23,345 nt of DNA from Octopus sinensis (GCF_006345805.1 NW_021836621.1:1-23345); one strand, 5' to 3'. Positions 74 through 18,137 are shown, counted from the first letter of the stretch. Notes: generated from the sequence alone by a model not told the origin. Numbers and translations: made by a program.

Positions 74-133
74 ACTTCCAATAATTCAGTGTCAAATTGA
101 CACTGAATTATTGGAAGTCCACCTGAAGATTGT
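59..133. repeat. Perfect 37-bp inverted repeat with 1-nt spacer
   Basis: 59-95 ACAATCTTCAGGTGGACTTCCAATAATTCAGTGTCAA is the exact reverse complement of 97-133. Confidence 0.97.
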
Positions 134-3100
134 GACACTTTCTCGAAACACCAACACACTCACATTCTCATCTAACTTAATTAGTTTACTGTTCCGGTCC
201 CTAATGTCACTATAATCATAATGAACAGGTTCCTCGAATGCAGGAATGGAAAAAGGGACCATTGCTGTCCTATATGGAAGTCTCCTCACTGATATTTTAT
301 CAATTCCTGAATTATTAATCTCTGCTATGTAATTACCACATCTCACCTTTAATCTATCTTTACCAATTATTTCACCTGATTTACCTCTTCTTTTTCTTCC
401 CCCATCTCCATCTCCTTCTCTGTATTCCAATTTATTAATTAATTCATTACTGAATATTTCCTTGTTCGTTTCAGATGTAATGGAAGGGAAACGAAGACCA
501 GAATCAAGATTTGATAACAACACAGATTCCAGAATGTTCACTTGGTCCCCATCAATCTTTATGCAATGACATTCAATCAATTCATTATGTACACACCAGT
601 AAATACCCGCCACTTTTCTCCATATTATACCATAAGGGATGAGACTCGACCAAACTTGAGATGCCTGCAAATCTTCTCCATTCAGTTGAAATATTTCTTT
701 CCTTTTAGGAACCGTGGCCATTATGCGTGATTCTTGTGTAAAACACACACCACCAACTAAACTTCCAGCATCTCTATGACATAGCAACTCCCCATCTCTA
801 TCAAATATTTTAAAATTTCCATTATTGGCTTTTTCACACACAACTGTCTTTCCTTCCTCAGAGACATCAAAATCTTTCACTTGAACAGGACATTCGTCTG
901 TTTGTAAACGAGCAACCGGGAAGCTGTCTCGATTCACCATAAACAACCCTTCAACATACAATTCATTCTTTCTCCATCCCGCTGTGGGGCTTCCAACAAA
1001 CCTTGGTCCTTTACATTCTATATTGCAGAATTCTACTTTATCTTTATAAATTCTTTGATTTAAAAATATTCTCTTGTATTCCCCTTTTTGGGTCCAACAC
1101 AAAATGTTTTTATATCTAAACAGACCCAAATATTTCTTCCACTCACCATAAATGTACAAAAAACTGTCATCAGTTGTCATCTTGCTTGCAACAAAATAAT
1201 CAAAATCGATGTAGTGTCTGATTGGATGTAAATATTGACCATCACTGTTGAAGAAAATTATGAATCTTTCATTTAAGACAATGATGACATCTTCAGCAGT
1301 AACCTTAATATCATGGATGACATCAAAATAATTTCCATCTTCTGTTCTCTCTATTAATGGTTCAGGTATGTCTATTTGTTTTATTTCCTTCGCACTCGAA
1401 TGTATTTCATCAATATCAACAAAATACAAATGACATGCATCTCCCAAATTACTACAAACCAGTTGATTATTTGATAAAGAAGCCACACAATGATATTTTC
1501 TTCTTGTTTGGTAAATTACCAACGACAATGGAAATTCCACTTTTAATGTCAACAGTTCGGATTCAGCATAAAAACAATCCAAATTTATAATGACCAGTGT
1601 GTTTGACTGCCATCGACACATTTTATTACATGTATAAAAATTCACTTTGATTGAATCCAAAAGGTGACCATCAAATGTGAATATCTTGATGTTTCCATTC
1701 TCCCAGTCAAATCCTGCAATCAAGTTATTTTCAGTAATTAACAAATGATTAATTACCACTGGTTCTTTGTCTCCCAAATGTTTAGGGAGACGAATATGTC
1801 TGGCTTTATCAGAAACTGTCAGGTCCTGTAGATATAAAGTGGAAGACAACATTTCACTGAGAGAAATGTTTCTGGGAAATACATCCACCAGGTCGATGTA
1901 ATAATTAAGTTGATTATTAGTAACGAGATCATTGACCAACAAATTCTGATCGTTTATGGCAAACATACGGCTTCTGTCTATCAGATAAACAGATGTTTGG
2001 TCAATAGATCCACCTTGGAGACTGAGGGGACGTTTCACTTGGGACATTAAAACACTGGGGACCATCTGACGACCGACATGACCACCACCACCTATTCTAG
2101 TGTTGTACTGGAAAGCTTTTTCCTTAGTAACAATTAATAGCTTTTCTGTTTTTGTGTCTATTGATAATGATTTCACAAACACAGGGATATTAATTGTCTT
2201 AATTACTTCAACTTGATTATAATAATTGATGGCTAAAATATCTAAATGTGATGGTTTATCACAATAACAAACAATTTCACCTTCACCCATCTTACACACC
2301 TGTACATAAGGCTGCCTTAATGATACACTTCTCACTGTCTTTGATAGGTTTCCGATGACCCTTAATTGTTTCTGTAGGGGTAATGTGACCCCTATATGAT
2401 TTGAATCCCATCGATATATATCTGTGGCTGTAGACGGCAGAGATAATCTGGACACAATGTCTCCTTCTTCAGAAATGTACAACAAGTAATCATGCTTGAT
2501 GTCAGACACCACCAACTGTCCATTGGACAGATTACATATTTCGCCAATGACAAGTTTTTGGTCTTTCTCCTTTTCTTTGAGTCGTAGATTTAGATTTCTG
2601 ATGTAAGGATTTTTTGTGTGTAAACGACAGCCAGACAACCGGCCTTGATACTTGTAAAGAAGAACCCTGTTGAGTTGAGCGTCCGGGACATAAAGAGTTC
2701 CTTGGAAAACAGCAATGTGAGGGTGAACAGGGAAAGGCAGTTCCCACTGCCATTTCATTTCTCCATATTGATCGTAACATCTGAGAATAGAGTGTCTCTT
2801 GAAGAGGACATAGAAATAAACATTATCAGAGTAGATGTGATGAGGGTAGCCATAGAATGGAAGGTATTTTTGAAAAAGTTCTTCACCACATGTGGAATAA
2901 AATACCATTTTATTTTCGTTTCCATCTACGACTACAAAATTAATTGGAGTTGCAGCAATGCTGACATTATAATGTCCCAGAGAAATTCTTTCTGCAATGT
3001 CAACTTTATCTTTGTTGATCAATAGGATATGGATCTCGCTTTTGTTTTCAGTGGTGGTCACAGCCAGACACTTATTTGATACAATATGACATATTTTCAT

Positions 3101-4324
3101 GTAATCAGTATGGACTTTCATTAAAGGGCCTTTTCTTAGTTCAGGACAGGTGATATACTGAAATCCTTTCATTTCACAATAAAATACCAGGAATCTGTTT
3201 GCGTTTATTCTACAACAGAAAGAAGGAAGCTCAAAGAAAACTGAATTATTTTGGTTAATTATTTCCCCGTTATCAGTGAATAATTTAGCTTTCTTGTTTT
3301 TGTAAATTATTAATATAGAAGATGTAGACATAGGTAGAATATTAGTAATGTTGTAGCAATCCTCAATATCAATATAGTCTTTTAAACTGGGGGTATGTAG
3401 CTGGTGGTTGTATGACAGTTTGGGCCAAAAGTCTTTATTCATTTGAATACCATGTGGTTTGCCGCAATAATCTGTTACCAAAATGGTATCTTTACCAACA
3501 GAAATAGAGCGGCATTTCCTGCCAATGTCCCTCCTTGTTACACCACCTTTAGCTGAAATCCTATAAATTATTTGTCCCTGGAGGACATAGAAATAATTTT
3601 GGTACAGAGAGATTTTACTTGGGAGGTGCAGAGAATGGGTCTCTACCTCCCATAACTGTTGACCATCCAGTTTGTAACAGATTACTCTGTTGATGCTGGC
3701 GAATGTAATTACAAGTATATTCTGGACCCCTACAGCAATATCTGTAGGTGTTTCTTTGGTAATAAATTGATAGTTTATGGTATTATCCTCCCAATCAAAT
3801 TGGTAAACTGTTTCACCAAACATTTCTACACCTATAAGTGTAGAATCTTCCAAGTAACTCACCATATATAACCCCAACTTTATCCTTTTGATCTTAAAGG
3901 TTTTGGTGCTGATAATAAGAATCATTTCTTGGAAGGGGAGGGTTGCCAGAACCATGTCTTCACTGATTCTGGTGAAACTGGTCACAGAAGATGGACAATG
4001 GACATCAATTCTGTCACTGTCTCTTGTTACTAAACTTATTATCTTGCAATGGTGGGAATATGTCATCACTCCCTCCTCTATGATGACAATATTTGATATT
4101 ATTGGGATTTCTTCAAATTCTTCTCCAGATTCCTCAATGTTTGCTTCTCTGGTCACAACTGGCTGAAGAGGCCGAAATTTTGTGGTTACTTTTGGTGGTT
4201 CAATGGTCTTGTGGTTGTATGGGTTACAGGTGACATAAATGTCAAAGAGTCTTTGTTGAAACCAATCAAAGTTTTGGTGAACAAAATCATTATTTTGTCT
4301 TGCAATTTCCAGAAATCTTGGCAT
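92..4324 (-). CDS. Copy A: multi-NHL-like beta-propeller protein (1410 aa ORF), 3'-truncated and preceded by an in-frame nonsense codon; possibly a pseudogene
   Basis: 4.2 kb stop-free ORF in AT-rich DNA. Repeated NHL-like blades, e.g. IGEICNLSNGQLVVSDIKHDYLLYISEEG, HIAVFQGTLYVPDAQLNRVLLY, VKDFDVSEEGKTVVCEKANNGNFKIFDRDGELL. A paralog lies at 13495-16818. Confidence 0.85.
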   Translation of the reverse strand: MPRFLEIARQNNDFVHQNFDWFQQRLFDIYVTCNPYNHKTIEPPKVTTKFRPLQPVVTREANIEESGEEFEEIPIISNIVIIEEGVMTYSHHCKIISLVTRDSDRIDVHCPSSVTSFTRISEDMVLATLPFQEMILIISTKTFKIKRIKLGLYMVSYLEDSTLIGVEMFGETVYQFDWEDNTINYQFITKETPTDIAVGVQNILVITFASINRVICYKLDGQQLWEVETHSLHLPSKISLYQNYFYVLQGQIIYRISAKGGVTRRDIGRKCRSISVGKDTILVTDYCGKPHGIQMNKDFWPKLSYNHQLHTPSLKDYIDIEDCYNITNILPMSTSSILIIYKNKKAKLFTDNGEIINQNNSVFFELPSFCCRINANRFLVFYCEMKGFQYITCPELRKGPLMKVHTDYMKICHIVSNKCLAVTTTENKSEIHILLINKDKVDIAERISLGHYNVSIAATPINFVVVDGNENKMVFYSTCGEELFQKYLPFYGYPHHIYSDNVYFYVLFKRHSILRCYDQYGEMKWQWELPFPVHPHIAVFQGTLYVPDAQLNRVLLYKYQGRLSGCRLHTKNPYIRNLNLRLKEKEKDQKLVIGEICNLSNGQLVVSDIKHDYLLYISEEGDIVSRLSLPSTATDIYRWDSNHIGVTLPLQKQLRVIGNLSKTVRSVSLRQPYVQVCKMGEGEIVCYCDKPSHLDILAINYYNQVEVIKTINIPVFVKSLSIDTKTEKLLIVTKEKAFQYNTRIGGGGHVGRQMVPSVLMSQVKRPLSLQGGSIDQTSVYLIDRSRMFAINDQNLLVNDLVTNNQLNYYIDLVDVFPRNISLSEMLSSTLYLQDLTVSDKARHIRLPKHLGDKEPVVINHLLITENNLIAGFDWENGNIKIFTFDGHLLDSIKVNFYTCNKMCRWQSNTLVIINLDCFYAESELLTLKVEFPLSLVIYQTRRKYHCVASLSNNQLVCSNLGDACHLYFVDIDEIHSSAKEIKQIDIPEPLIERTEDGNYFDVIHDIKVTAEDVIIVLNERFIIFFNSDGQYLHPIRHYIDFDYFVASKMTTDDSFLYIYGEWKKYLGLFRYKNILCWTQKGEYKRIFLNQRIYKDKVEFCNIECKGPRFVGSPTAGWRKNELYVEGLFMVNRDSFPVARLQTDECPVQVKDFDVSEEGKTVVCEKANNGNFKIFDRDGELLCHRDAGSLVGGVCFTQESRIMATVPKRKEIFQLNGEDLQASQVWSSLIPYGIIWRKVAGIYWCVHNELIECHCIKIDGDQVNILESVLLSNLDSGLRFPSITSETNKEIFSNELINKLEYREGDGDGGRKRRGKSGEIIGKDRLKVRCGNYIAEINNSGIDKISVRRLPYRTAMVPFSIPAFEEPVHYDYSDIRDRNSKLIKLDENVSVLVFRESVTIFRWTSNNSVSI

Positions 4325-4348
4325 TTTACGTTTGATATTACGTAAAAT

Positions 4349-4663
4349 TCAAGATCCATTTAAACCCAGAGAGTGCATGTGATTACATTTATCCTTTACA
4401 TAATCTATAAATGTATTGATGTGGTCTGTTTTGATTAGTGTTCGGTAACATGTCACAATATGAAGGAAACTTGGTAACATGGACTTTTCCTGTTCTTTAG
4501 ATTTCTTTGTGTCTTTTCTTTCCTGTTCTTCTGTTTTCTTTGTGTTTTGTGTATGTAATATTTGGGGAAGAATTGGTGTAGTTTCCTTATAAATTGCTGT
4601 TGTATCACAGACTGTGGCAGGATTGAGAGCCAACATTTTGTTTTCTTCATTAATCTTCTCCAT
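4349..4663 (-). pseudogene. N-terminal part of copy A, in frame with the 1410-aa ORF but separated by one TGA
   Basis: Reads ...LGLNGS*ILRNIKRK-MPRFLE in a single frame. ATG context is cataaaATGG with in-frame stops upstream. Copy B has the homologous segment with CGA at this codon. Confidence 0.78.
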
Positions 4664-4776
4664 TTTATGAATATAGAATTATTATCTTTTTCTGTTGAAT
4701 ATATTCTTTTCTGTGGATTTTGTTTTCTTCCTTTTGTATGTATGTATAACAACAATATTAGTAATAATAATAATAA

Positions 4777-5575
4777 ATCTAATCGAAAAAGCTCATCGAT
4801 TCTGTACCAACACGCCTAACAGGAACACGGGGGATCAATCAATAACATAGAGATTAAGATATTGTCCACACATAGAACAGATGCAACAATTAGACAAATT
4901 ACAGAAGCTACACATATAATAGAAAATAAACCTAGCCTGAATAGAAAACTAGAATGGAGCAATAGCGCACACCACAACATATGACAATAGTGGATCCCGA
5001 AAACATAATAAATACACAGATAAATAAACAAATAGAAATGAATAACTATATATATATATATCTATGTATATATGTATGTATATGTATATATATATATATT
5101 TTTTTTTTCGATTAGATTTTTTTTTTTTCGATTAGATTTATTATTATTATTACTAATATTGTTGTTATACATACATACAAGCATATGTAATGATAATAAT
5201 GGGTGGATGTAAACACATGAACAAAATTAGAACAAAAGCAACAACAACAAAAACAAAATGCAAATTACAAGAATGTATATAACCAGAAGATACAAATATT
5301 ACAGGCATCCCCCCCACACACACACTAAATAAACATAGACGCACATAGAGATATAAGCATGCGCAAATGAAGACATACAATAGAAATACAAAATGGCTGA
5401 CGTTAGTAAGGAGAGACACAAGTAAGTGAGAAGAAAACAAAGGACCACTGATGCGGTCACAGGAGTGTGACGAAAGAACTTTGGCCGAAATAAGATTAAG
5501 ATTAATGTAAAAAATAAATATCACTGAAGCAAAATAACACCAAATACATAGTGCGTGTGTTTTTATTGGCTAAAC
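4777..5575 (+). mobile_element. Penelope-like element remnant: GIY-YIG endonuclease C-terminus plus pLTR-like tail
   Basis: The frame through 4788-4984 reads KSSSILYQHA*QEHGGSINNIEIKILSTHRTDATIRQITEATHIIENKPSLNRKLEW. This fits the PLE GIY-YIG end pattern (H..+.H...+KIL...R.+.EA..I....P.LN...E). A hammerhead-like motif (5442-5486) and AATAAA follow. The 3' boundary is approximate. Confidence 0.75.
5442..5486 (+). ncRNA. Variant or degenerate hammerhead-like motif
   Basis: GG(A)CCA-CUGAUGCG-GUCAC-aggagu-GUGAC-GAAA-GAACUU-UGGCC. Stems I and II are present, but the core reads CUGAUGCG instead of CUGAUGA. It lies downstream of the PLE endonuclease remnant. Confidence 0.5.
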
Positions 5576-5600
5576 TGGCAAAATGACCATTCCGAAATAT

Positions 5601-5603
<3 letters not shown>

Positions 5604-5640
<37 letters not shown>
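5604..5640. repeat. (TA)n microsatellite
   Basis: Direct reading. Many similar tracts occur, e.g. about 9350-9388, 9488-9528 and 11840-11935. Confidence 0.95.
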
Positions 5641-5645
<5 letters not shown>

Positions 5646-5684
5646 TACATATATACACAAACACACACTCATATATTCAGGATG

Positions 5685-5818
5685 GACTTCTTTCTGTTTC
5701 TGTCTACCAAAGCCACTCACAAAGCTTTGGTTATAGTAGATGACACTTGCTTAAGGTGCCACACGGTGGGACTGAACCTGGAACCATGTAGTTGGGAAGC
5801 AAGCCTCTTATCACAAAG
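5685..5818 (-). mobile_element. tRNA-derived-type SINE, module 1
   Basis: Reverse complement has GGTTCAGTCCCAC...GGCACCTTAAGCAAGTGTC...GGTAGACAGAAAC, matching copies at 7301, 9167 and 10342. Confidence 0.8.
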
Positions 5819-5821
5819 ACA

Positions 5822-6161
5822 CTCCTGTTGTTATTTGGATTTGATTTTCACTTCCTCCCTCTTAAGATCTCAAAATCCATTTTGAAATAATTCCAGTTGT
5901 TTCCAACTGATAAAGCATTCATTTACATTTACTCAACAACTCAAGGGTTTTGTTTACACATTGGTCCCCAAAATGCAAGTATTCACATCCCCACCACCAC
6001 CGCCACCACAAAAAAAAACCCCACTCTCATCATCATCATCATCTTATTCATTAGTTTCAGCTGTCATTTATTAAAAATATAATGCTTTGTGTATTGTTTT
6101 TGTTTTCCTGTACACCACCTCATTCTTTCCTCTCTCTCTCACTTTCTCTCTCTTTTTCTCT

Positions 6162-6203
<42 letters not shown>

Positions 6204-6600
6204 AAATAATCCCTCTGAAATCATTTGATCCTTGTTGTTCTTTTGATTTCGTTTCCCCTCCCTCCCTCTCAACATCTAACAATCTGCTTTTGTGTCACAA
6301 TGGCTAAGCTGCCTTTAGACAAAAATAAATATAATTGAAACCTCTTTGCAAACTGATAACACATTCATTTACAGATTCAGGGTCATCTCAAGGGTTTTGT
6401 TTTTAAAACCCTTAGAAACTGGTTTTTCTAATGAATATGCATTGTTCAGCATAATTTTCACTTTCTTCAGTCTGGATGCAAATACTTACACCAACACCAC
6501 CACCACCACAACAACAACAGCATTATCATCTTCATCATCATCACCATCACAATCATTGTGTTATTTTGAATTTATTAAAAATAAATTTATTTATTCTATT
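5822..6600. repeat. Degenerate tandem duplication of a roughly 400-bp unit
   Basis: Same ordered motifs (TTGAAA..AACTGATAA..CATTCATTTACA..CTCAAGGGTTTTGTTT..ATGCAA..(CAC)n..(CAT)n..ATTTATTAAAAATA) at about 5880-6080 and 6335-6590. Confidence 0.7.
6128..6200. repeat. (CT)n microsatellite
   Basis: Direct reading. Confidence 0.95.
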
Positions 6601-6944
6601 TTTTTCCGTTCACTGATTAAAAAGGTGACACAGCACCTTTGGGTGTTTTCTTTTTTCCTATCAGAATACAATCTTGGATGTTTTCATATATTCATAAGTT
6701 CGATTAGAGGTGGATTTCGCCTTAGTTAAGGGATGGCACCATTCAAGAAGTTACTGGTTAAATACCTAATATGTTTAGGGAAAATGATAGGTTTACATAT
6801 AAACCATGGTTTATAATCATTCAAATGAAGACAAGAGAATGGAGATGTACCCTTTAATACAATTTATTATAAGCAAAATCTAATACATACACACACACAC
6901 ATACATACATACACACACACACACATGCAAACACACAAACACAC

Positions 6945-7130
6945 ACGATGATGGAGCTCTGAACTCTAAACGGTGTTTTCATTCTTTCTTGATGTATTTT
7001 GTCTTATTCCTTTCCGTTGAAGAGCGTAGGCTCGAAACATGAAGCACTTTTACTAGTTTTCCGAGTATCAAACTAATACACTTGCTTGTTGATCATACAC
7101 CCGGTTTTGTCTTTTGTTTTTCTATAAAAA
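6945..7130 (+). mobile_element. Short repeat with a hammerhead-like TTGAAGAGCGTAGGCTCGAAAC motif; possible PLE pLTR relic
   Basis: A GAGC/GCTC hairpin is flanked by (U)UGAAGA and GAAAC at 7017-7038. Stems I and III are not convincing. Confidence 0.35.
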
Positions 7131-7300
7131 TATATATATTTATATATGTAGACATATATATATAATATATATATATATATATAGATACATAGATAGATAG
7201 ACAGATTGATATATATATATGTAGATAGACACAGATAGATAGATATATGTATGTATATCTATATAGACTGATGTTTGCTTATATATACATATAGACACTA

Positions 7301-7450
7301 GTGTAGCTGTGTGATAAGAAGCCTGCGTCCCAACTACATGGTCCCAGGTTCAGTCCCACTGAGAGGCGCTTTGGGCAAGTGTCTTATTTTGTAGCCTTAG
7401 TCCAACCAGATCCCTGTGAGTGGATATGGTAGACGGAAACTGAAAGAAAC
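7301..7450 (+). mobile_element. tRNA-derived-type SINE, module 1
   Basis: GTGATAAGAAGCCTGCGTCCCAACTACATGGTCCCAGGTTCAGTCCCACTG...GGTAGACGGAAACTGAAAGAA, with a B-box-like GGTTCAGTCC. Confidence 0.82.
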
Positions 7451-7459
7451 TTGTATATA

Positions 7460-8447
7460 CAGTGGGGTGTGGAAATAAATATTTGCAGAGAAACACCCCC
7501 ACACCATGATGTTGCCACCTCCAAACTTTACGGTAGGAATTGTGTTTTTCGGCGAATAGGTGGTACTATCTTTCCTCCGAACATGGCTACGCGAATTTCG
7601 TCCAAACAATTCAATTTTCGACTCATCTGTCCATAGAACATTTTCCCAGAATGTATCAGATTTATCTTTATGTTCATAAACAAATTTTAAACGGGCATCT
7701 CTATGCCTTTTAGTCAACAGTGGATTTTTTCTAGGAGAGCATGATTTCAGTTCATTCCTATGAAGTTCATTGCTGATTGTTCTTAGTGTAACACTAGTCT
7801 CTGAAGCTAACAAGTCTTCTTGCAACTCCTTTCTGGTGATCATTGAGTTTTTTCCAATTCTTCACTTCATTTTTCTTAAAGATCTATGGGAAATCTTGCA
7901 TGGTGCACCGGATCTTATTCTGTTTTCAACAGTTCCCGATTTTTTTATATTTGAATAAATGAAAATATGGTAGAAAGTGGAATACAAAGGGTCTCTGATA
8001 TTTTCCTGTAACTTTTACCTCTTTTCCACCGTTCAATAATTAAGTTTTTCACTGAATTTGTGAGTTCTTTACTTTTTGCCATTATTACGATACTACTTTA
8101 TATTGTCTCAATGTTGAATGAAGAAGCTAGTGTTTTCACACTTAGAAATGACAACTGATAAGATTATTGGAACAAACGAGAAAGTTCTAGTAAAAATAAA
8201 ATTATTTTAACCGTATTTTGTGGCATAGAAAATTATAAATTTATTTTGTACGAATACTTTTTTCACCCCTAAATATTTATAATTGTATATAAACTCCTTA
8301 GTTACTATAATTTATTAGTTTCTTTTGCATATTCTTAGTTTATGCAAGTGAATGCAAATATAGTATTGGTATATCCCATTTATGTTCATTAGAAATTAAA
8401 TAAATAAAGAATTATGACGTTTACGAATATTTATTTCCCCACCACTG
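7460..8447 (-). mobile_element. Tc1-family DNA transposon, internally deleted IR/DR-type derivative (988 bp)
   Basis: TA flanks at 7458-59 and 8448-49. Terminal inverted repeats CAGTGGGGTGTGGAAATAAATATT and CAGTGGTGGGGAAATAAATATT. Inner direct repeat at about 8249-8269. Transposase remnant from ATG 8081: GKSYRKISETL, RSGAP, VLWTDESKIELFG, TVKFGGGNIMVWGCFSA, then cut. Confidence 0.92.
7484..8081 (-). pseudogene. Tc1 transposase pseudogene (paired-like HTH and first D of DD34E; C-terminal half deleted)
   Basis: ORF 7397-7843 plus an upstream frameshifted, stop-containing N-terminus. It ends at the TIR after WGCFSA. Confidence 0.9.
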
Positions 8448-8460
8448 TATGTATATATTT

Positions 8461-8666: not shown

Positions 8667-8671
8667 ATCCA

Positions 8672-8681
8672 TACACACACA

Positions 8682-8738
<57 letters not shown>

Positions 8739-8804: not shown

Positions 8805-8862
<58 letters not shown>
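8672..8862. repeat. (CA)n and (TCTA)n microsatellites
   Basis: Direct reading: (CA)n at 8672-8730 and (TCTA)n at about 8804-8862. Confidence 0.95.
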
Positions 8863-8884
8863 CATCTGTATAGATATATAAACA

Positions 8885-9345: not shown

Positions 9346-9394
<49 letters not shown>

Positions 9395-9396
<2 letters not shown>

Positions 9397-9484
9397 TATA
9401 ATGTGTTTATTATGATAGTTTGACTTTAATAGTCCCTTGTAGTGTGAAGCATTTATGTATGGTAAAGCCCTGATATATAAACAC

Positions 9485-9531
<47 letters not shown>

Positions 9532-9976: not shown

Positions 9977-10130
9977 GGACAGACACACTAGAACGGGAAA
10001 ATGCTGAGACTCCAGACTGGGCAGTTTGTGTGATGCCAGACCAGAAATATCCTCAGATGTCCTTAAGCAGGTGGATTTCATTCCTCCCGTTGCCATTTCT
10101 CTATGTGGATCATAAGGTATTCTTTTTTTT

Positions 10131-10986: not shown

Positions 10987-11070
10987 CAGGGGTTCTCAAC
11001 CATTTCTTTATCTATGGACCCCTTTAACTACTATTTTACTCAGACGGACCCCATTGAATCCATACAATGT
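10987..11070 (+). mobile_element. Possible hAT (Charlie-like) terminus
   Basis: CAGGGGTTCTCAACC followed by GGACCCC repeats. No matching opposite end was found. Confidence 0.35.
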
Positions 11071-11841
11071 TTAAAACTAATGGTGACCCCGAGGTGATAA
11101 TTGTAACGGTCTGATATTGAATTTGCAAACAATATTATGATATTTTGGAGTCATACATATTTAATATTTATAAATATTTAACGGAAAGTTGTAAAATGTG
11201 TAAGATGAACAATGCATGAAGTTTTAAGAAAGTATTTATTTACAGTTATGTTACAATACCTTGCCTCGAAGGGCAGGTTTTGGTACATCCAAAGGCATGC
11301 GAAAGTTACATGCGGTAGAATGTTTGAGTTTGGGTTCTCTTCATTGTTTAGTAGTCATTGTGGAGACAGATAGAATGATGTTGTAAGAGAACAGAATTCG
11401 AGTTAGTGAGAGAGAGAGAGAGAGAGTGTGGGATGTTGTCTGAAGTTGCTTTCTCCCTCTGAGCAAGGTTGGTCAGCCAGACCTCGTTGAGTCGTCAGCG
11501 ATTGGTGACTAACTGATTTTTGCTTGGGATGTTCTTGCTTTTATAACTATCCAGAGGATAGATATATCATTGAGAACAATAGATTTAGTTTGTGGTCTTG
11601 TTATCTATTCTAGCTTTTGGTGAAGTAGAAGAGGTTAGAAAGGGTCAAGTGTTGAAGACATTATTTCGGCCTAGCTAAAGGCATCTGGAAAATGTAAAAA
11701 CTGCTGTAGGAGAAAAACCATTGTTCCACCGTGGGAAAAGTTCTGTAGCAGCATTAATTTAATTTTGGCTATGGTGGATCGAATCCACTTCATACATGCA
11801 AGATTCACTACATACATACATACATACATACATACATACAA

Positions 11842-11929
<88 letters not shown>

Positions 11930-12566
11930 ATATATTAAAAAATAAAACATATGCATATATATATACATATATGTACGCACCTACCTCTACATGTATATAT
12001 ACATGCATATATGAGTACAGGACACCGAAAAAACGTCAAACAAAATGAGAAACGAAAACATAGACACAAACCAAAGGAACTGGACATTTTTCTTAAACAA
12101 CAAAAAAAATAGAGTACAGGACAAATAACACAAGGAAAAAAACCCCTTTTTCAGTCGCCATGGTTTCATCTACACTACGTTTTGAAGATACAGACACACA
12201 CACATATACGCACACGTGTATATACACATTTTACTGAAACTGCAAAATTATCCCAGAACTCTAACACAGTCTTTTTTTACTTGTTTCAGTGAATTGAATG
12301 TGGCCATGCTAGAGCACCTCATTATATATATTGTAAAGGGAGTTCATATTTATGTTTATAGCCTTATTTCTATACATACATTCCTAAATATGTGCATATA
12401 TATATAAACACATGTACATATACTATATATAAATATACACACACACACACAAATAGAGTGTGTTGAGGAATGTTACAACACTAATTGTTAGTGTGTAGAA
12501 TGCAATGTATGCAATGCAGGTTCGATTCCAGGCGAAGCCATTTACAATAATAATAATAATAAAATA

Positions 12567-12713
12567 AAGAAGAAGAAGAAGAAGACGAAGGAGGAGGAGG
12601 AGGAAGCGGAAGAAGAAGAAGAAGAAGAAGAAGAAGAAGAAGAAGAAGAAGGAGAGGAGGAAGCGGAAGAAGAAGAAGAAGAAGAAGAAGAAGAAGAGAG
12701 AAGAAGAAGAAGA
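12567..12713 (+). repeat. (GAA)n/(GGA)n polypurine tract
   Basis: About 147 bp, almost pure purine, with two copies of GAGGAGGAAGCGGAAGAAG. It begins about 27 nt past the copy B stop. Confidence 0.95.
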
Positions 12714-12739
12714 TTGAATTTTAATATTTCTGGAAATAT

Positions 12740-15700
12740 TTATTTGTCAAAATAAAAGAAAGCAAAAGATTGACGTCCAGGAATAATTCCAAAAACCATC
12801 AAAGAATTGTCTGAAACATCCAAACCAAGAACTTCAAAGACTTCATTATCATCCTCTCTGAGGAGTAAATATTTTGGATTATATTCATAAATCAGGATTT
12901 CATTATTTTCAGTTATTTCCTCTTCAATATGTTGAGGTATTTCATAAATATTGTTTCTTCTATCTGTTATATAAACACATTCACCAATTATGGTTAAATG
13001 ACGTCTTGGAATATAATATTGCAGATTAGAAGTTATAGTGGCTTTTGTTCCTATCCTCCTCACCAAAGACTTTTCCTGAACCATTCCACAACACAAAAAA
13101 TCTTCCACCATACAGGCTTGTCCTCTTCCTTCATCTCCCTCCTCACAACAACAACATCACCAAAAGATGTGACTCCCACACCATCCACCCCTTCATCTCC
13201 CGCAAACCTTCCTTTTCTCTTCATCTTCCCATGACACACTTCATCTTTACATTTCCCATCTTTGATATCAACCACATCCACATAATAAGGGTCAAAGATG
13301 TTGGGGTCTTTGCAATAATAGTAATCCTTGTTGTTCTCCCATATTCTTTGGTATTTCTTGTCTCTCTCTTCTTGAGTTATGTCTCTAATATAATGACCAC
13401 CACACACGAGTTGATTGTCGTTATTTATAAATTCTGTTGTAGTATTTCTCAGTTCTGATTGTTTTTAAATGACGGAGATCCCTGTCGAAGACCCTCATTT
13501 CTCTCCCAAGGCGACAATGAAACATTCCTCTGTCCACCGACATATGTCCAGTGGTGGTCGTTGTTGTTGTTCATGTTGAAGTATGTCCACTGTTGTTGTT
13601 GTTGTTGTTCTGATTAATGTGACACTTTCTCGAAATATCAACACACTCACATTCTCATCTAACTTAATTAGTTTACTGTTCCGGTCCCTAATGTCCCTCA
13701 AATCATAATCAACAGGTTCCTCGAATGCAGGAATGGAAAAAGGGACCATTGCTGTCCTATATGGAAGTCTCCTCAGTGATATTTCATCAATTCCTGAATT
13801 ATTAATCTCCGCTATGTAATTACCACATCTCACCTTTAATCTACCTTTACCAATTATTTCACCTGATTTACCTCTTCTTCTTCCTCCTCCATCTCCATCT
13901 CCTCCTCTGTATTCCAATTTATTAATTGATTCATTACTGAATATTTCCTTGTTCGTTTCAGATGTAATGGAAGGGAAACGAAGACCAGAATCAAGATTTA
14001 ATGACGACACAGATTCCAGAATGTTCACTTGGTCCCCATCAATCTTTATGCAATGACATTCAATCAATTCATTATGTACACACCAGTAAATACCCGCCAC
14101 TTTTCTCCATATTACACCATAAGGGATGAGACTCGGCCAAACTTGAGATGTCTGCAAATCTTCTCCATTCAGTTGAAATATTTCTTTCCTTTTCGGAACC
14201 GTGGCCATTATGTGTGATTCTTGTGTAAAACACACACCACCAACTAAACTTGCAACATTTCTGTGACATAGCAACTGGCCGTCTTCATTGAATATTTTAA
14301 CATTTCCATTATTGGCTTTTTCACACACAACTGTCTTTCCTTCCTCAGAGACATCGAAATCTTTTACTTGAACAGGAAATTTGTCTGTTTGTAAACGAGC
14401 AACCGGGAAGCTGTCTCGATTCACCATAAACAACCCTTCAACATACAATTCATTCTCTCTCCATCCCGCTGTGGGGCTTCCAACAAATCTTGGTCCTTTA
14501 CAGTCTATACTGCAGAATTCTACTTCATCTTTATAAATTCTTTTATTTAAAAATATTCCCTTGTATTCCCCCTTGTGGGTCAAACACAAAGTGTTTTTAT
14601 AGCTAAATGAATGCAAATATTTCTTCCACTCACCATAAATGTACAAAAAACTGTCATCAGTTGTCATCTTGTTATCAACAAAATAATCAAAATCGATGTA
14701 GTGTCTGATTGGATGTAAATATTGACCATCACTGTTGAAGAAAATGATGAATCTTTCGTTTAAGACAATGATGACATCTTCATCAGTAACTTTAATATGC
14801 TTGATTTCATCAGAATAATTTCCATCTTCTCTTCTCAATATTAATGGTTCAGGTATCTTTATTTGTTTTATTTCCTTCACACTCGAATGTATTTCATCAA
14901 TATCAACAAAATACAAATGACATGCATCTCCCAAATTACTACAAACCAGTTGATTATTTGATAAAGAAGCCACACAATGATATTTTCTTCTTGTTTGGTA
15001 AATTACCAACGACAATGGAAATTCCACTTTTAATGTCAACAGTTCGGATTCAGCATAAAAACAATCCAAATTTATAATGACCAGTGTGTTTGACTGCCAT
15101 CGACACATTTTAATATGTTCATAAACATTCACTTTGATTGAATCCAGAAGGTGACCATCAAATGTGAATATCTTAATGTTTCCATTCTCCATGTCCCATC
15201 CTGCAATCAAGTTATTTTCAGTAATTAACATATGATTAATTACCACTGGTTCTTTGTCTCCCAAATGTTTAGGGAGAGGAATATGTCTGGCTTTATCAGA
15301 AACTGTCAGGTCCTGTAGATATAAAGTGGAAGACAACATTTCACTGAGAGAAATGTTTCTGGGAAATACATCCACCAGGTCGATGTAATAATTAAGTTGA
15401 TTATTAGTAACGAGATCATTAACCACCAAATTATGATCAGTTATAGCAAACATACGGCTTCTGTCTATCAGATAAACAGACGTTTGGTCAATAGATCCAC
15501 CTTGCAGACTGAGGGGATGTTTCACTTGGGACATTAAAACACTGGGGACCATCTGACGACCACCATGACCACCACCACCTATTCTAGTGTTGTACTGAAA
15601 AGCTTTTCCCCTAGTAACAATTAATAGCTTTTCTGTTTTCTTGTCTATTGATAATGATTTCACAAAAACAGGGATATTAATTGTCTTAATTACTGCAACT

Positions 15701-18137
15701 TGATTATAATAATTGATGGCCAAAATGTCTAAATGTGATGGTTTATCACAATAACAAACAATTTCACCTTCACCCATCTTACACACCCGTACATAAGGCT
15801 GCCTTAATGATACACTTCTCAGTGCCTTTGATAGGTTTCCGATGACCCTTAATTGTTTCTGTAGGGGTAATGTGACCCCTATATGATTAGAATCCCATCG
15901 ACATATATCTGTGGCTGTAGACGGCAGAGATAATCTGGACACAATTTCTCCTTCATTAGATATGTATAACAAGCAATCATGGTTGATGTCAGACACCACC
16001 AACTGTCCATTGGACAGATTACATATTTCGCCAATGACAAGTTTTTGGTCTTTCTCCTTTTCTTTGAGTCGTAGATTTAGATTTCTGATGTAAGGATTTT
16101 TCGTGTGTAAACAACAGCCAGACGACTGGTCATGATTCTTGTAAAGAAGAACCCTGTTGAGTTGAGTGTCCGGGACATAAAGAGTTCCTTGGAAAACAGC
16201 AATGTGAGGGTGAACAGGGAAAGGCAGTTCCCACTGCCATTTCATTTCTCCATATAGATCGTAACATCTGAGAATAGAGTGTCTCCTGAAGAGGACATAG
16301 AAATAAACATTATCAGAGTAGATGTGATGAGGGTAGCCATAGAATGGAAGGTATTTTTGAAAAAGTTCTTCACCACATGTGGAATAAAATACCATTTTAT
16401 TTTCGTTTCCATCTACGACTACAAAATTAATTGGAGTTGCAGCAATGCTGACATTATGATGTCTCAGAGATATTCTTTCTGCAATGTCAACTTTATCTTC
16501 ATTGATCAAGAGGATATGGACCTCGCTTTTGTTTTCAGTGGTGGTCACAGCTAAACACTTATTTGATACAATATGACATATTTTCATGTAACCAGTTTTC
16601 ACCTTTATTAAAGGGCCTTTTCTTAGTTCAGGACAGGTGATATACTGAAACCCTTTCATTTCACAATAAAAGACCAGGAATCTGTTTGCATTTATTCTAC
16701 AAAGTGCAGAAGGTGAAGAATTAAAAGTTATATAATTTTGGCTATTTTTTCCCTCAATATCAGAGAGTAATATAGCTTTCTTATTCCCGTAGAGTATTAA
16801 TATGAAAGATGTTGACATAGAAGAATATTTTTGACATTATAGAAATCCTCAATATATATATGGTTGATCAGACTGGGTGTACATAGCTGGTTGCTGTAAG
16901 ACGACTTGAACCAAAAATCTTTAGTTGTCCCTATATTATGCAGAACCCCAAAATAATCAGTCAAGAAAATAGTATCTGAGCAAACGCAAAAATACCGACA
17001 TTTCATTCCAATTTCCCTCTTTGACACACCACCCTTACCTGAAATCCGATAAATAATATGTCCCTGGAGGACATAAAAATGGTTTTGGTACACAGTGATG
17101 CTGGTTGGGAGATCCAGAGAATGGGTCTCTACCTCAAATATCTGCTGGCCATCCACATCATAACAGGTAACTCTGTTAATATTAGCAAATGCTATTAACA
17201 GGTTACCTTGTGGACCAACAGCAATATCTGCAGGTATCTCTTTGCCAATAAATGAGTGATAATTCTATTATCTTCCCAATCAATGAGGATATGGTTTTAC
17301 CAAACAGTTCTACACCTATAAGCGTAGAATGTTCCAAATAAGAAACCAAGATTAATCCTAGCTGAATTCTTTTGATTTTAAAACTTAAAGGGTTGATAAT
17401 AAGAATCATTTTTTTGAAGGGGAGGGTGGCCAGGACTGTATCTTCACTGATTCTGGTAAAATCAGTAACAGAAGATGAGCAACGAACATCGTTTCTGTTG
17501 CCGTCTCTTGTTACACAACATATTGTCATGCAGGGGTGGGAATATGTTACAATTCCCCCTTGTATGACAACAATATTGGATATGGGGTTGCTTAAGTCTT
17601 CACCAGATTCTTCAATCTTTGCTTCTCTAGTCACAACTGGCTGAAGAGGCCGAAATTTTGTGGTTACTTTTGGTGGTTCAATGGTCTTGTGGTTGTATGG
17701 GTTACAGGTGACATAATGTCAAAGAGTCTTTGTTGAAACCAATCAAGGTTTTGGTGAACAAAATCATAATTTTGTTTTGCAAATTCCAGAAATCTTGGCA
17801 TTTTACGTTTGACATTACGTAAAATTCGAGATCCATTAAAACCAGAGAGTTCATGTGATTACATTTATTTTTTACATAATCTATAAACGTTTTGATGTGG
17901 TCTGTTTTGATTAGTGTTCGGTAACATGTCACAATATGAAGGAAACTTGGTAACATGGACTTTTCCTGTTCTCAGATTTCTTTGTGTCTTTTCTTTCCTG
18001 TTCTTCTGTTTTCTTTGTGTTTTGTGTATGTAAATTTGGGGAAGAATTGGTGTAGTTTCCTTATGAATTGGCGTTGTATCACAGACTGTGGCAGGATTGA
18101 GAGCCAACATTTTTTTTTCTTCATTAATCTTCTCCAT
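12740..18137 (-). pseudogene. Copy B: full-length multi-NHL-like propeller gene (about 1801 aa if ten frameshifts are repaired); pseudogene or assembly-damaged gene
   Basis: ORFs 17865-18137, 17702-17956, 17203-17634, 16797-17156 and 13495-16818 are colinear with copy A. ORFs 13060-13407 and 12740-13111 continue the propeller-like sequence. Frame bookkeeping fits nine -1 shifts and one +1 (or -2) shift. Confidence 0.8.
13495..16818 (-). CDS. Longest intact segment of copy B (1107 aa), NHL-like propellers
   Basis: About 91 differences in about 1025 aligned residues versus copy A (manual count). Confidence 0.85.
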   Translation of the reverse strand: MSTSFILILYGNKKAILLSDIEGKNSQNYITFNSSPSALCRINANRFLVFYCEMKGFQYITCPELRKGPLIKVKTGYMKICHIVSNKCLAVTTTENKSEVHILLINEDKVDIAERISLRHHNVSIAATPINFVVVDGNENKMVFYSTCGEELFQKYLPFYGYPHHIYSDNVYFYVLFRRHSILRCYDLYGEMKWQWELPFPVHPHIAVFQGTLYVPDTQLNRVLLYKNHDQSSGCCLHTKNPYIRNLNLRLKEKEKDQKLVIGEICNLSNGQLVVSDINHDCLLYISNEGEIVSRLSLPSTATDICRWDSNHIGVTLPLQKQLRVIGNLSKALRSVSLRQPYVRVCKMGEGEIVCYCDKPSHLDILAINYYNQVAVIKTINIPVFVKSLSIDKKTEKLLIVTRGKAFQYNTRIGGGGHGGRQMVPSVLMSQVKHPLSLQGGSIDQTSVYLIDRSRMFAITDHNLVVNDLVTNNQLNYYIDLVDVFPRNISLSEMLSSTLYLQDLTVSDKARHIPLPKHLGDKEPVVINHMLITENNLIAGWDMENGNIKIFTFDGHLLDSIKVNVYEHIKMCRWQSNTLVIINLDCFYAESELLTLKVEFPLSLVIYQTRRKYHCVASLSNNQLVCSNLGDACHLYFVDIDEIHSSVKEIKQIKIPEPLILRREDGNYSDEIKHIKVTDEDVIIVLNERFIIFFNSDGQYLHPIRHYIDFDYFVDNKMTTDDSFLYIYGEWKKYLHSFSYKNTLCLTHKGEYKGIFLNKRIYKDEVEFCSIDCKGPRFVGSPTAGWRENELYVEGLFMVNRDSFPVARLQTDKFPVQVKDFDVSEEGKTVVCEKANNGNVKIFNEDGQLLCHRNVASLVGGVCFTQESHIMATVPKRKEIFQLNGEDLQTSQVWPSLIPYGVIWRKVAGIYWCVHNELIECHCIKIDGDQVNILESVSSLNLDSGLRFPSITSETNKEIFSNESINKLEYRGGDGDGGGRRRGKSGEIIGKGRLKVRCGNYIAEINNSGIDEISLRRLPYRTAMVPFSIPAFEEPVDYDLRDIRDRNSKLIKLDENVSVLIFRESVTLIRTTTTTTVDILQHEQQQRPPLDICRWTEECFIVALGEK

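What the first reader, a model, noticed from the sequence alone, without database searches (positions are those of the whole stretch)
92..18137. Tandem pair of giant intronless multi-propeller genes: candidate lineage-expanded receptor family
Seen: two copies about 13.5 kb apart, each one uninterrupted reading unit of 4.5-5.4 kb with NHL-like blades through almost the whole length (roughly five to six propellers by eye) and no RING or B-box. Established: NHL proteins such as TRIM2/3/71 and Brat carry one propeller, which often binds RNA or protein ligands. Inference: a string of divergent propellers on one exon, duplicated in tandem and diversifying, fits an uncharacterised innate-immune or ligand-sensing family.
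Basis: partly seen in the sequence, partly recalled or inferred. Interest (0 to 1): 0.75.

Follow-up and report, generated by a model that had tools for sequence, protein, structure and literature searches.

The report
Octopus six-propeller NHL-derived gene pair
The window holds two neighbouring, damaged copies of an octopus-only gene family whose giant proteins are chains of six beta-propellers descended from the single NHL propeller of TRIM-NHL proteins. The family is real, expanded and fast-evolving, but its function is untested.

Summary
The two copies are real. Both lie on the minus strand about 13.5 kb apart and share 90.9% DNA identity over 4.6 kb. Each is collinear with single-exon Octopus vulgaris genes of about 1,800 aa.

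Neither copy is an uninterrupted reading unit:
- Copy 1 has a CGA>TGA nonsense codon at codon 105. A 75-bp perfect palindrome replaces its D5-D6 linker.
- Copy 2 has about 10-12 frameshifting indels, all at its two ends. Its central 1,107-aa ORF is intact.

"NHL-like" is supported by remote homology, not by Pfam. The Pfam NHL model never hits. A family profile does find a cuttlefish RING/B-box/NHL protein at E 5.8e-10 among 1.8 billion proteins, and hhalign gives 99% probability for domain 4. AlphaFold models are all-beta with four-strand blades, and Foldseek returns tandem-propeller proteins.

No RING, B-box, signal peptide or transmembrane segment was found.

The family was found only in octopods (three Octopus species and Argonauta). 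O. vulgaris has at least 29 gene models on one 29-Mb chromosome, most of them partial. Evolution shows mosaic gene conversion and dN/dS of 0.5-0.7 overall. In the closest intact pair, D4+D6 give about 2.5 (p=0.002).

An immune or receptor role remains inference only.

The parts
123..4663 (-). Copy 1 of the family gene. It corresponds to P0001 codons 1-~1511 in one frame and is 93.9-94.6% DNA-identical to O. vulgaris paralogues.
4349..4351 (-). Premature TGA in copy 1 at family codon 105. P0001 has CGA here, so this is a CpG transition.
92..4324 (-). Longest ORF of copy 1 (1,410 aa). It runs from the internal Met at family codon 114 to a stop inside the palindrome.
59..133 (.). Perfect palindrome (37-nt arms, 1-nt spacer). 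It replaces the poly-Thr/Gln linker between D5 and D6 of copy 1 and carries the stop at 92-94.
4109..4663 (-). Copy 1 N-terminal region: a variable charged head, a ~90-aa helical module, and the conserved KHKTIExPK..KFRPL..EESGED linker motif. The module is family-specific.
3389..4108 (-). Copy 1 propeller-like domain D1 (pLDDT about 80-88).
2564..3388 (-). Copy 1 propeller-like domain D2.
1814..2563 (-). Copy 1 propeller-like domain D3. hhalign to the cephalopod NHL set gives 96.5%.
944..1813 (-). Copy 1 domain D4, the most NHL-like. The homologous region of P0001 was modelled with 24 strands (six 4-strand blades). HMMER E 5.8e-10 and hhalign 99.1% to the cuttlefish TRIM-NHL propeller.
293..943 (-). 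Copy 1 domain D5. It is beta-rich but modelled at low confidence. One blade resembles WD40 repeats.
12743..18137 (-). Copy 2, with full-length homology to P0001 codons 1-1801. It reads in five frame segments and has about 10-12 frameshifting indels, all confined to 18034-16822 and 13510-13077.
13495..16818 (-). Intact central ORF of copy 2 (1,107 aa). It spans the start of D2 through about the first 95 codons of D6.
16875..17588 (-). Copy 2 D1 segment of a deeply divergent 'allotype'. dS is about 0.85 to copy 1 and P0001, against <=0.11 in the neighbouring domains. This is a gene-conversion or recombination mosaic.
12743..13779 (-). Copy 2 domain D6, the C-terminal propeller, broken by three frameshifts.
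4734..5180 (.). 447-bp MITE-like element with perfect 57-bp terminal inverted repeats. It starts exactly where copy 1/copy 2 homology ends, 70 bp upstream of the copy 1 ATG.

Best explanation
WHAT IT IS. The window holds two adjacent paralogues from a tandem, birth-and-death array of an octopod-restricted gene family.

Intact members (about 1,660-1,900 aa, one coding exon) encode soluble proteins that are probably cytosolic. Each has a family-specific helical N-terminal module followed by six consecutive beta-propeller domains (D1-D6). These domains arose by serial duplication of the six-bladed NHL propeller of a molluscan TRIM-NHL (RING/B-box/coiled-coil/NHL) ancestor, with loss of the RING and B-box.

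Both copies in this window are damaged. Copy 1 has a nonsense codon at codon 105 and a palindromic replacement of the D5-D6 linker. Copy 2 has about 10-12 frameshifts at its ends around an intact 1,107-aa core. They are most likely pseudogenes or truncated derivatives. They may still serve as gene-conversion partners for intact neighbours.

LIKELY MECHANISM OF INTACT MEMBERS (inferred, not shown). They would act as a multivalent intracellular binding scaffold:
- Each propeller offers a ligand-binding face, as the NHL propellers of Brat, LIN-41/TRIM71 and TRIM2/3 do for RNA or proteins.
- D1-D3 are the conserved part.
- D4 and D6 are the rapidly changing specificity modules.
- The N-terminal helices would mediate self-association.
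- With no RING there is no intrinsic E3 ligase activity, so the output would be sequestration or recruitment of other factors.

The array-wide diversification pattern fits recognition of fast-evolving targets such as viruses, transposons or other conflict partners.

The confidence figure is a blend: about 0.85 for the structural and evolutionary description, and about 0.3 for the functional mechanism.
For: SHOWN
- Duplication and collinearity with single-exon genes.
- Lesions in both copies.
- All-beta four-strand blade pattern: model 1 has pLDDT 69, model 2 has pLDDT 62, and D1, D2, D4 and D6 lie mostly at 70-90.
- Foldseek probability 1.0 with E 1e-19 to 1e-13 against tandem-propeller proteins, including IFT-A, EML, LRP2/LRP4, UTPs, DDB1 and Apaf-1.
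- Best non-family hit of the family profile among 1.84 billion proteins is P0076 (Acanthosepion pharaonis), E 5.8e-10 over 229 profile positions.
- P0076 carries RING, B-box and NHL above Pfam cut-offs. It matches TRIM28/TRIM2/TRIM3 at the N-terminus and the TRIM2/3/71, Brat and Thin NHL structures at the C-terminus.
- hhalign to the cephalopod NHL set: D4 99.1%, D6 97.5%, D3 96.5%, D1 87.7%, D5 74%, D2 66%. Against a WD40 control the values are 1.6, 3.6, 1.0 and 38% for D4, D6, D3 and D1.
- Inter-domain homology: D3-D6 94.6%, D4-D6 94.4%, D4-D5 84.6%.
- No RING, B-box, NACHT or transposase domain.
- No transmembrane-grade hydrophobic segment, and a charged N-terminus.
- Octopod-only distribution.
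- At least 29 O. vulgaris models on OX597841.1, found from 6.5 to 22.7 Mb. About 8 are full length and the rest partial.
- Per-domain dS varies 10- to 30-fold within single gene pairs, which indicates gene conversion.
- dN/dS of 0.53-0.74 overall, and about 2.5 in D4+D6 of the closest intact pair, p=0.0019.
- The frameshifts of copy 2 avoid the central 1,100 codons. By my arithmetic on the positions, the chance of this is about 1e-4.
Against: - The Pfam NHL model does not recognise any domain. PDB sequence hits to TRIM71 and Thin NHL are only at E about 1-2.
- Model confidence is moderate. D5 and the linkers are below pLDDT 50. I could not inspect coordinates, so ring closure and blade number per domain are inferred from strand counts.
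- hhalign also scores the NHL set against WD40 at 96.5%, so hhalign probabilities between propellers are not fully specific.
- There is no expression, localisation or ligand evidence of any kind.
- The high dN/dS could partly reflect relaxed constraint in a decaying family rather than positive selection. The >1 signal comes from one gene pair.
- The frameshifts in copy 2 could in principle be assembly errors.
Confidence: 0.6

Rival explanations
1. One reading: both copies are intact, expressed genes for a diversified innate-immune or ligand-sensing receptor.
For: - Long open frames of 1,410 and 1,107 aa.
- Lineage-specific tandem expansion.
- Elevated dN/dS concentrated in D4 and D6.
- Ancestry from TRIM-type proteins, a class often used in antiviral defence (general knowledge).
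Against: - Copy 1 has a premature TGA at codon 105, and its ORF ends in a palindrome before D6.
- Copy 2 has about 10-12 frameshifts.
- No signal peptide or transmembrane segment, so it is not a surface receptor.
- No signalling domain such as death, TIR, NACHT or RING.
- No expression data.
Confidence: 0.12
2. The repeated 5.4-kb unit is cargo of, or is itself, a mobile or selfish element rather than a host gene family.
For: - Dozens of copies, many broken.
- No introns in the coding region.
- Copy 1 homology is bounded on one side by a MITE-like element with 57-bp terminal inverted repeats and on the other by a perfect palindrome.
- A Tc1/mariner remnant lies between the copies.
Against: - No transposase, reverse transcriptase, integrase or helicase domain in the unit.
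- Copies are concentrated on one small chromosome rather than dispersed.
- Flank homology extends to different lengths in different paralogues (up to about 1 kb upstream and patches 3-5 kb away), as expected for segmental duplication.
- A divergent member (P0056/P0091/P0092) is conserved at >=90% identity across three species at one locus each.
- D1-D3 are under purifying selection, with omega 0.14-0.5.
Confidence: 0.05
3. Intact members are structural or assembly scaffolds (cytoskeletal, ciliary, sperm, or another octopod-specific tissue) or reproductive proteins. Their rapid evolution would then reflect sexual conflict or relaxed constraint, not pathogen sensing.
For: - Foldseek's best matches are tandem-propeller scaffolds of cilia, axonemes and ribosome assembly, including IFT-A, EML-type microtubule inner proteins, UTPs and DDB1.
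- No enzymatic or signalling domain.
- High omega is also typical of reproductive proteins (general knowledge).
Against: - Those Foldseek matches have about 9% identity and TM 0.2-0.3, which is generic propeller-chain similarity.
- Sequence homology points to NHL, not WD40.
- Housekeeping scaffolds are normally single-copy and conserved beyond one order.
Confidence: 0.13
4. The disruptions are assembly or sequencing errors, and both copies are in fact intact full-length genes.
For: - Most lesions in copy 2 are single-base deletions.
- A perfect palindrome can be an assembly artefact.
- The central 1,107 codons are clean.
Against: - The deletions are not in long homopolymers (contexts).
- The stop in copy 1 is a substitution, not an indel.
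- Annotated O. vulgaris paralogues from a different assembly show the same kinds of breaks. Examples are 1,260+242 aa and 1,228+275 aa split models, and a reverse-strand copy in four frame pieces.
Confidence: 0.1

Closest known systems
TRIM-NHL proteins (TRIM2, TRIM3, TRIM71/LIN-41, Brat, Thin) and their molluscan relatives, for example the Acanthosepion pharaonis RING/B-box/NHL protein P0076
   Same: - The propeller domains are homologous to the NHL propeller of these proteins: HMMER E 5.8e-10, hhalign 99.1% for D4 and 96-97% for D3 and D6, 26% identity over 209 columns.
- The D4 model has six 4-strand blades.
- The protein is probably cytosolic.
   Different: - Six propellers in series instead of one.
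- No RING, B-box or filamin domain, and no detectable homology of the N-terminus to the TRIM coiled-coil.
- The Pfam NHL model fails on every domain.
- Octopod-only, multi-copy and fast-evolving, rather than conserved developmental regulators.
Expanded B-box/propeller proteins of bivalves and other molluscs, for example Potamilus streckersoni P0079. B-box orthogroups are reported as expanded in bivalves in PMC8382680.
   Same: - Lineage-specific expansion of TRIM-derived proteins in molluscs.
- D3, D1, D5, D6 and D4 match the propeller of this group at hhalign 93-98%.
   Different: Those proteins keep the B-box, have one propeller, and are about 470 aa long. The octopod family has lost the zinc-binding modules and multiplied the propeller.
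LDL-receptor-related proteins (LRP2, LRP4, LRP5/6) with multiple YWTD six-bladed propellers
   Same: Chains of several six-bladed propellers on one polypeptide. They are among the top Foldseek matches, at E about 5e-16.
   Different: LRPs are secreted or membrane proteins with EGF and LDL-A modules between the propellers. Here there is no signal peptide, transmembrane segment or EGF module, and no sequence homology.
Tandem WD40 propeller scaffolds (IFT-A subunits, EML, UTP/WDR proteins, DDB1, Apaf-1)
   Same: Multi-propeller architecture. These are the best Foldseek E-values. One D5 blade resembles WD40 repeats.
   Different: No Pfam WD40 hit. hhalign of D2, D3, D4 and D6 to a WD40 set gives at most 4% (D1 38%). 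Identity in the Foldseek alignments is about 9%.
Rapidly diversifying tandem arrays of intracellular sensors (vertebrate TRIM5/TRIM22 clusters, fish finTRIMs, plant and animal NLR arrays). This is an analogy only.
   Same: Tandem birth-and-death array with many pseudogenes, gene-conversion mosaics, and dN/dS>1 localised to putative recognition modules.
   Different: A different recognition fold: an NHL propeller chain rather than SPRY or LRR. There is no effector domain, and no functional or expression evidence here.

Membership tests
NHL repeat / NHL six-bladed propeller (Pfam PF01436) | Recognised by the curated NHL profile at or above its gathering score | tested here: not met
   No NHL hit for the window ORFs, for 17 family members, or for seven single-domain pieces, even at E<=10.
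NHL repeat / NHL six-bladed propeller (Pfam PF01436) | Significant sequence homology to bona fide NHL propellers | tested here: met
   - The family profile hits the cuttlefish TRIM-NHL protein P0076 at E 5.8e-10, P0078 (NHL) at 3.9e-7 and P0080 at 1.5e-5, in a library of 1.84 billion proteins.
- P0076 itself matches the TRIM2/3/71, Brat and Thin NHL structures.
- hhalign: D4 99.1%, D6 97.5%, D3 96.5%. D1, D5 and D2 are weaker at 88, 74 and 66%.
NHL repeat / NHL six-bladed propeller (Pfam PF01436) | Six blades of four antiparallel strands closing a ring | tested here: inconclusive
   The D4 model has 24 strands in 284 residues at pLDDT 70-90. D2 has about 23 strands, D1 about 21 and D6 about 28. 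Coordinates could not be inspected, so ring closure and exact blade number are not verified.
TRIM / tripartite-motif proteins | N-terminal RING finger | tested here: not met
   No RING-type profile hit in any member.
TRIM / tripartite-motif proteins | B-box zinc finger | tested here: not met
   No B-box hit. hhalign of the N-terminal region to the RING/B-box/coiled-coil part of P0076-like proteins gives 0.3%.
TRIM / tripartite-motif proteins | Coiled-coil dimerisation region | tested here: inconclusive
   Helices are predicted at family residues about 115-146, and there is a ~90-aa helical-looking conserved module. No homology to TRIM coiled-coils was found, and the module is seen only in this family.
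WD40 repeat proteins | WD40 profile hits / GH-WD repeat signature | tested here: not met
   - No PF00400 hit above cut-off. There is a single-member ANAPC4_WD40 hit at E 0.004 and sub-threshold WDR90 hits.
- hhalign to a WD40 set gives at most 4% for D2, D3, D4 and D6, 38% for D1, and 95% for D5.
LRP-type YWTD multi-propeller receptors | Signal peptide, EGF/LDL-A modules between propellers, transmembrane anchor | tested here: not met
   No such Pfam domains. The highest 19-residue Kyte-Doolittle mean in P0001 is 1.52, and it lies within a beta-strand region. The N-terminus is charged.
NLR/STAND innate-immune sensors | NACHT/NB-ARC P-loop NTPase plus repeat sensor domain | tested here: not met
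   No NTPase domain in any member. The nSTAND-WD40 proteins among the weak hits match only one blade.
Transposable element | Element-encoded transposase/RT/integrase, defined termini, dispersed insertion | tested here: not met
   - No such domain in the unit.
- Copies cluster on one chromosome.
- Flank homology is of variable extent.
- Target-site duplications were not examined.

The most novel reading that the evidence does not exclude
Octopods evolved a germline-encoded repertoire of intracellular recognition proteins by multiplying the NHL propeller of a TRIM-NHL ancestor into a six-propeller chain. D4 and D6 act as hypervariable specificity modules. Diversity is generated across a chromosome-scale tandem array by gene conversion, in which partly decayed copies such as the two in this window serve as sequence donors. 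This would be functionally analogous to TRIM5/finTRIM or NLR arrays but built on a different fold.
Probability: 0.15. Interest if true: 0.8.

Novelty: new variant of a known kind. Interest (0 to 1): 0.5.

Why it matters
NHL propellers are known as single C-terminal RNA- or protein-binding modules of TRIM-NHL regulators. A chain of six on one polypeptide, stripped of the ubiquitin-ligase part, is an architecture I could not find described.

The family has been amplified to dozens of copies on one small octopod chromosome. It shows domain-level gene-conversion mosaics and an excess of amino-acid change in two specific propellers.

If expression and ligand binding are demonstrated, the family would join protocadherins, C2H2 zinc fingers and chemotactile receptors among the lineage-specific expansions of octopus genomes. 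It could also give a handle on cephalopod intracellular immunity, which is poorly known.

For these particular two copies the result is more modest. They look like decaying array members.

Tried and rejected
- Pfam on the window ORFs, on 17 members and on single-domain pieces. This gave no NHL, WD40, RING or B-box. The only hits were sub-threshold: DUF4934, WDR90 propeller and Mala_s_1.
- PDB sequence search. The single ORF gave nothing. The family profile gave only E about 1-2 hits to TRIM71 and Thin NHL, which are not significant on their own.
- The word-indexed profile search found only Octopus proteins. The exhaustive HMMER search was needed to reach the cuttlefish TRIM-NHL.
- N-terminal module. 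hhalign to TRIM N-termini was negative. A database search with an N-terminal profile returned only family fragments.
- Transposon hypothesis. It was rejected for lack of any mobility domain and because of the clustered distribution. The Tc1/mariner remnant at 7397-7843 is an unrelated intergenic insertion.
- Upstream coding exon. The apparent multi-exon models P0010 and P0014 turned out to have at most 2-7 codons in a 5' leader exon, with the remaining coding sequence collinear.
- Rfam scan of the window found nothing.
- I tried to place the window exactly in O. vulgaris. Seven loci match at 85-95% only, so the window is a different array member or comes from a closely related genome.
- Literature searches by LOC identifiers and by topic found no description of the family.
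- My first reading of the copy 1 stop position (4325-4327) was wrong. The stop is at 4349-4351 and the next ATG is at 4322-4324.
Full report
**Observation**

The window is AT-rich eukaryotic DNA, about 35% GC. A self-comparison shows one long direct repeat. Positions 123-4734 match 13610-18208 at 90.9% identity over 4,617 columns, an offset of about 13.48 kb. Everything else that repeats is microsatellite or short dispersed repeat.

Both repeat copies are coding on the minus strand. The only large ORFs in the window are 92..4324 (1,410 aa) and 13495..16818 (1,107 aa).

**Relatives, and what 'intronless' means here**

A protein search found 53 relatives. All are uncharacterised proteins of Octopus vulgaris, O. 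bimaculoides and O. sinensis. Full-length members are 1,660-1,900 aa, and the best match is 88-92% identical.

P0001 (1,801 aa) aligns to copy 1 over residues 1-1545 in one frame (4663->29). It aligns to copy 2 over residues 1-1801 in five frame segments (18137->12743).

In the O. vulgaris chromosome assembly, P0001, P0004 and the distant member P0056 are each encoded by one exon of exactly protein length. The gene models of P0010 and P0014 span 11-23 kb, but only 2-7 codons come from a 5' leader exon. 'One coding exon' is therefore correct for the family.

**The two window copies are not intact**

*Copy 1*
- It carries TGA at 4349-4351 where P0001 has CGA, at codon 105. The 1,410-aa ORF starts at the next Met, codon 114.
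- At its 3' end, homology to the family stops at about position 123-133.
- There a perfect palindrome (arms 59-95 and 97-133) replaces the poly-Thr/Gln linker between the fifth and sixth domains. The palindrome contains the terminating stop at 92-94.
- This palindrome is absent from seven O. vulgaris loci.
- Upstream, homology with copy 2 ends 70 bp before the ATG. That is exactly at the edge of a 447-bp element with perfect 57-bp inverted termini (4734-5180). The same element also occurs near another family member in O. vulgaris.

*Copy 2*
- It has about 10-12 indels that are not multiples of three, nine of them single-base deletions.
- All lie in 18034-16822 or 13510-13077. None lies in the 1,100 codons between.
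- By my arithmetic from these positions, a uniform distribution would give this pattern with probability about 1e-4.
- Either the centre was recently overwritten by gene conversion from an intact neighbour, or a truncated product is maintained.
- Similar split or broken models are common among annotated O. vulgaris copies. This argues against simple sequencing error.

**Fold**

AlphaFold2 was run on two segments, each with a 24-sequence family alignment:

| Model | Segment | Mean pLDDT | Result |
|---|---|---|---|
| 1 | Copy 1 ORF, residues 1-760 | 69 | Almost entirely beta, in runs of four strands |
| 2 | P0001 residues 856-1801 | 62 | Almost entirely beta, in runs of four strands |

- The well-modelled blocks lie mostly at pLDDT 70-90. 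They correspond to D1, D2, part of D3, D4 and D6.
- D5 and the linkers are poorly modelled.
- D4 has 24 strands in 284 residues, which is six four-strand blades.
- Foldseek against the PDB returns tandem-propeller proteins at probability 1.0: IFT-A subunits, EML-type axonemal proteins, LRP2/LRP4, UTP/WDR proteins, DDB1 and Apaf-1. E-values are 1e-19 to 1e-13, but identity is about 9% and TM-scores are 0.2-0.3.
- This confirms a propeller chain. It does not say which kind of propeller.

**Is it NHL?**

Pfam's NHL model never hits. This was tested on the window ORFs, on 17 members, and on seven single-domain pieces at E<=10.

Remote homology does point to NHL:
- A profile of family residues 186-1385 was searched exhaustively against 1.84 billion representative proteins. 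The best non-family matches were P0076 (E 5.8e-10, profile 772-1000 against residues 396-623), P0078 (3.9e-7) and P0080 (1.5e-5).
- P0076 is a 656-aa protein of the cuttlefish Acanthosepion pharaonis. It has RING, B-box and NHL above Pfam cut-offs.
- P0076 has clear similarity to TRIM28/TRIM2/TRIM3 at its N-terminus, and to the solved NHL propellers of TRIM2, TRIM3, TRIM71, Brat and Thin at its C-terminus.

Profile-profile comparison against a small alignment of these cephalopod NHL domains, with a bacterial WD40 control:

| Domain | hhalign to NHL set | hhalign to WD40 control |
|---|---|---|
| D4 | 99.1% (E 1.5e-18, 233 columns) | 1.6% |
| D6 | 97.5% | 3.6% |
| D3 | 96.5% | 1.0% |
| D1 | 87.7% | 38% |
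| D5 | 74% | 95% |
| D2 | 66% | 0.1% |

- Domains also match one another: D3-D6 94.6%, D4-D6 94.4%, D4-D5 84.6%.
- A caveat is that the NHL set itself scores 96.5% against WD40. hhalign probabilities between propellers are therefore not fully specific, and D5 is ambiguous.

My reading is that all six domains descend from an NHL-type propeller by serial duplication. They have diverged beyond the reach of the Pfam repeat model.

**What is absent**

- No RING, B-box, filamin, NACHT, death-fold, TIR or any enzymatic or mobility domain.
- The first ~185 residues are a variable charged head, a ~90-residue helical module, and a conserved linear motif (KHKTIExPK..KFRPL..EESGED) leading into D1.
- This module has no detectable relative outside the family.
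- There is no signal peptide-like N-terminus. No 19-residue window has transmembrane-grade hydrophobicity; the P0001 maximum is 1.52, inside a beta strand.
- The protein is therefore most likely cytosolic.

**Distribution and array structure**

- Every family-level hit comes from the three Octopus species or from Argonauta hians (1,913 and 1,925 aa).
- The cuttlefish and bivalve hits are single-propeller TRIM-like proteins. The six-propeller architecture therefore appears to be octopod-specific, within the limits of the databases.
- In O. vulgaris at least 29 clusters of gene models lie on one 29.19-Mb chromosome record (OX597841.1). Sampled positions run from 6.5 to 22.7 Mb.
- Only about eight of these are full length.
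- Neighbours can be head-to-tail or head-to-head, and broken copies sit next to intact ones.
- A distant member (P0056, P0091, P0092; 31% identical to P0001) is conserved at >=90% identity in all three Octopus species. It lies on the largest chromosomes and is also single-exon. It is a candidate for the ancestral, non-amplified gene.

**Mode of evolution**

Among four intact O. vulgaris genes, dN/dS is 0.53-0.74 overall. The per-domain picture is very uneven:
- D1 has omega 0.14-0.28.
- D2, D3 and D5 have omega 0.34-0.88, mostly around 0.5.
- D4 and D6 have omega 0.46-0.83 between distant paralogues.
- In the closest pair (P0001/P0004), D4 reaches 2.3 and D6 reaches 2.9.
- Pooled, D4+D6 have 107 nonsynonymous against 10.8 synonymous differences, Fisher p=0.0019.

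Synonymous divergence within a single gene pair varies up to 30-fold between domains. For example, P0001/P0004 has D1 at 0.74 and D6 at 0.021.

D1 occurs as two deep types that are shuffled among otherwise similar genes. Copy 1 groups with P0001. Copy 2 groups with P0004, P0010 and P0014. This is the signature of gene conversion or unequal recombination within the array.

The window copies show omega 0.7-1.4 in D4-D6 against P0001. For likely pseudogenes this is uninformative.

**Interpretation**

*Shown*
- Two damaged tandem members of an octopod-restricted family.
- The family is single-exon and encodes six-propeller proteins of NHL descent.
- It evolves by birth-and-death and gene conversion.
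- Excess amino-acid change is concentrated in D4 and D6.

*Inferred*
- Intact members act as cytosolic multivalent binders. Each propeller would offer a ligand face, as in Brat, LIN-41 and TRIM2/3 (general knowledge).
- The N-terminal helices would mediate self-association.
- There would be no intrinsic E3 ligase activity.
- The evolutionary pattern resembles that of intracellular restriction or sensor arrays. It is equally compatible with reproductive or other conflict-driven roles, and in part with relaxed constraint.
- I found no expression data and no literature on the family.

**Verdict**

The functional label (immune or ligand-sensing receptor) is untested, and a membrane or secreted receptor is unlikely.

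I rate it a new variant of a known kind, of moderate interest. The family deserves expression and selection analysis. The two copies here are probably decaying array members.

Noticed in passing
window 59-133: Perfect palindrome (two 37-nt arms, 1-nt spacer) sitting exactly where the poly-Thr/Gln linker of copy 1 should be. It is absent from seven O. vulgaris paralogous loci. It could be a hairpin-mediated rearrangement scar, a tiny foldback insertion or an assembly artefact.
   Followed up: partly
window 4734-5180: 447-bp AT-rich element with perfect 57-bp terminal inverted repeats, beginning exactly where copy 1/copy 2 homology ends. A 95% copy lies upstream of another family member in O. 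vulgaris (L007 5694-6140). It looks MITE-like.
   Followed up: partly
window 7397-7843 (-): ORF fragment with a Tc1/mariner-type transposase HTH domain (HTH_Tnp_Tc3_2, E 3.5e-15) in the spacer between the two copies.
   Followed up: no
window 12567-12713; also 5605-5655, 6130-6201, 7130-7265, 8673-8732, 8805-8867, 9473-9528, 11812-11972: Dense microsatellites in the spacer, including (AAG)48 immediately 3' of copy 2 and long (AT)n, (CT)n, (AC)n and (TCTA)n tracts.
   Followed up: no
window 16875-17588 versus 3389-4108: The first propeller (D1) exists as two deeply diverged types (dS about 0.75-0.85). These are shuffled among paralogues that are otherwise 90-95% identical. Copy 1 carries the P0001 type and copy 2 the P0004/P0010/P0014 type.
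   Followed up: partly
window 20868-21237 and 22449-22905: Non-coding blocks 2.7-4.8 kb upstream of copy 2 are 90-96% identical to sequence upstream of O. vulgaris paralogues (L005 8545-8917, L002 5385-5829). They also match sequence just inside the annotated 5' leader region of P0010 (L006 10213-10585). This may be a shared promoter or 5' UTR exon.
   Followed up: no
L004 3001-7989 (O. vulgaris OX597815.1) and proteins P0056/P0091/P0092: A divergent, single-exon family member (31% identical to P0001) is conserved at >=90% identity across three Octopus species, outside the amplified chromosome. It is a candidate ancestral copy.
   Followed up: partly
proteins P0003 and P0016 (O. vulgaris OX597841.1): Two annotated family models are fused to C2H2 zinc fingers or to a DUF4371 transposase-like domain. 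These are probably annotation chimeras with neighbouring genes or transposons rather than real architectures.
   Followed up: no
L002 14538-15266 and L003 13806-14633: In several O. vulgaris copies the last propeller (D6) is annotated as a separate small gene just after a truncated main ORF. The D5-D6 linker, a low-complexity Thr/Gln tract, is therefore a recurrent breakpoint, as it is in both window copies.
   Followed up: partly
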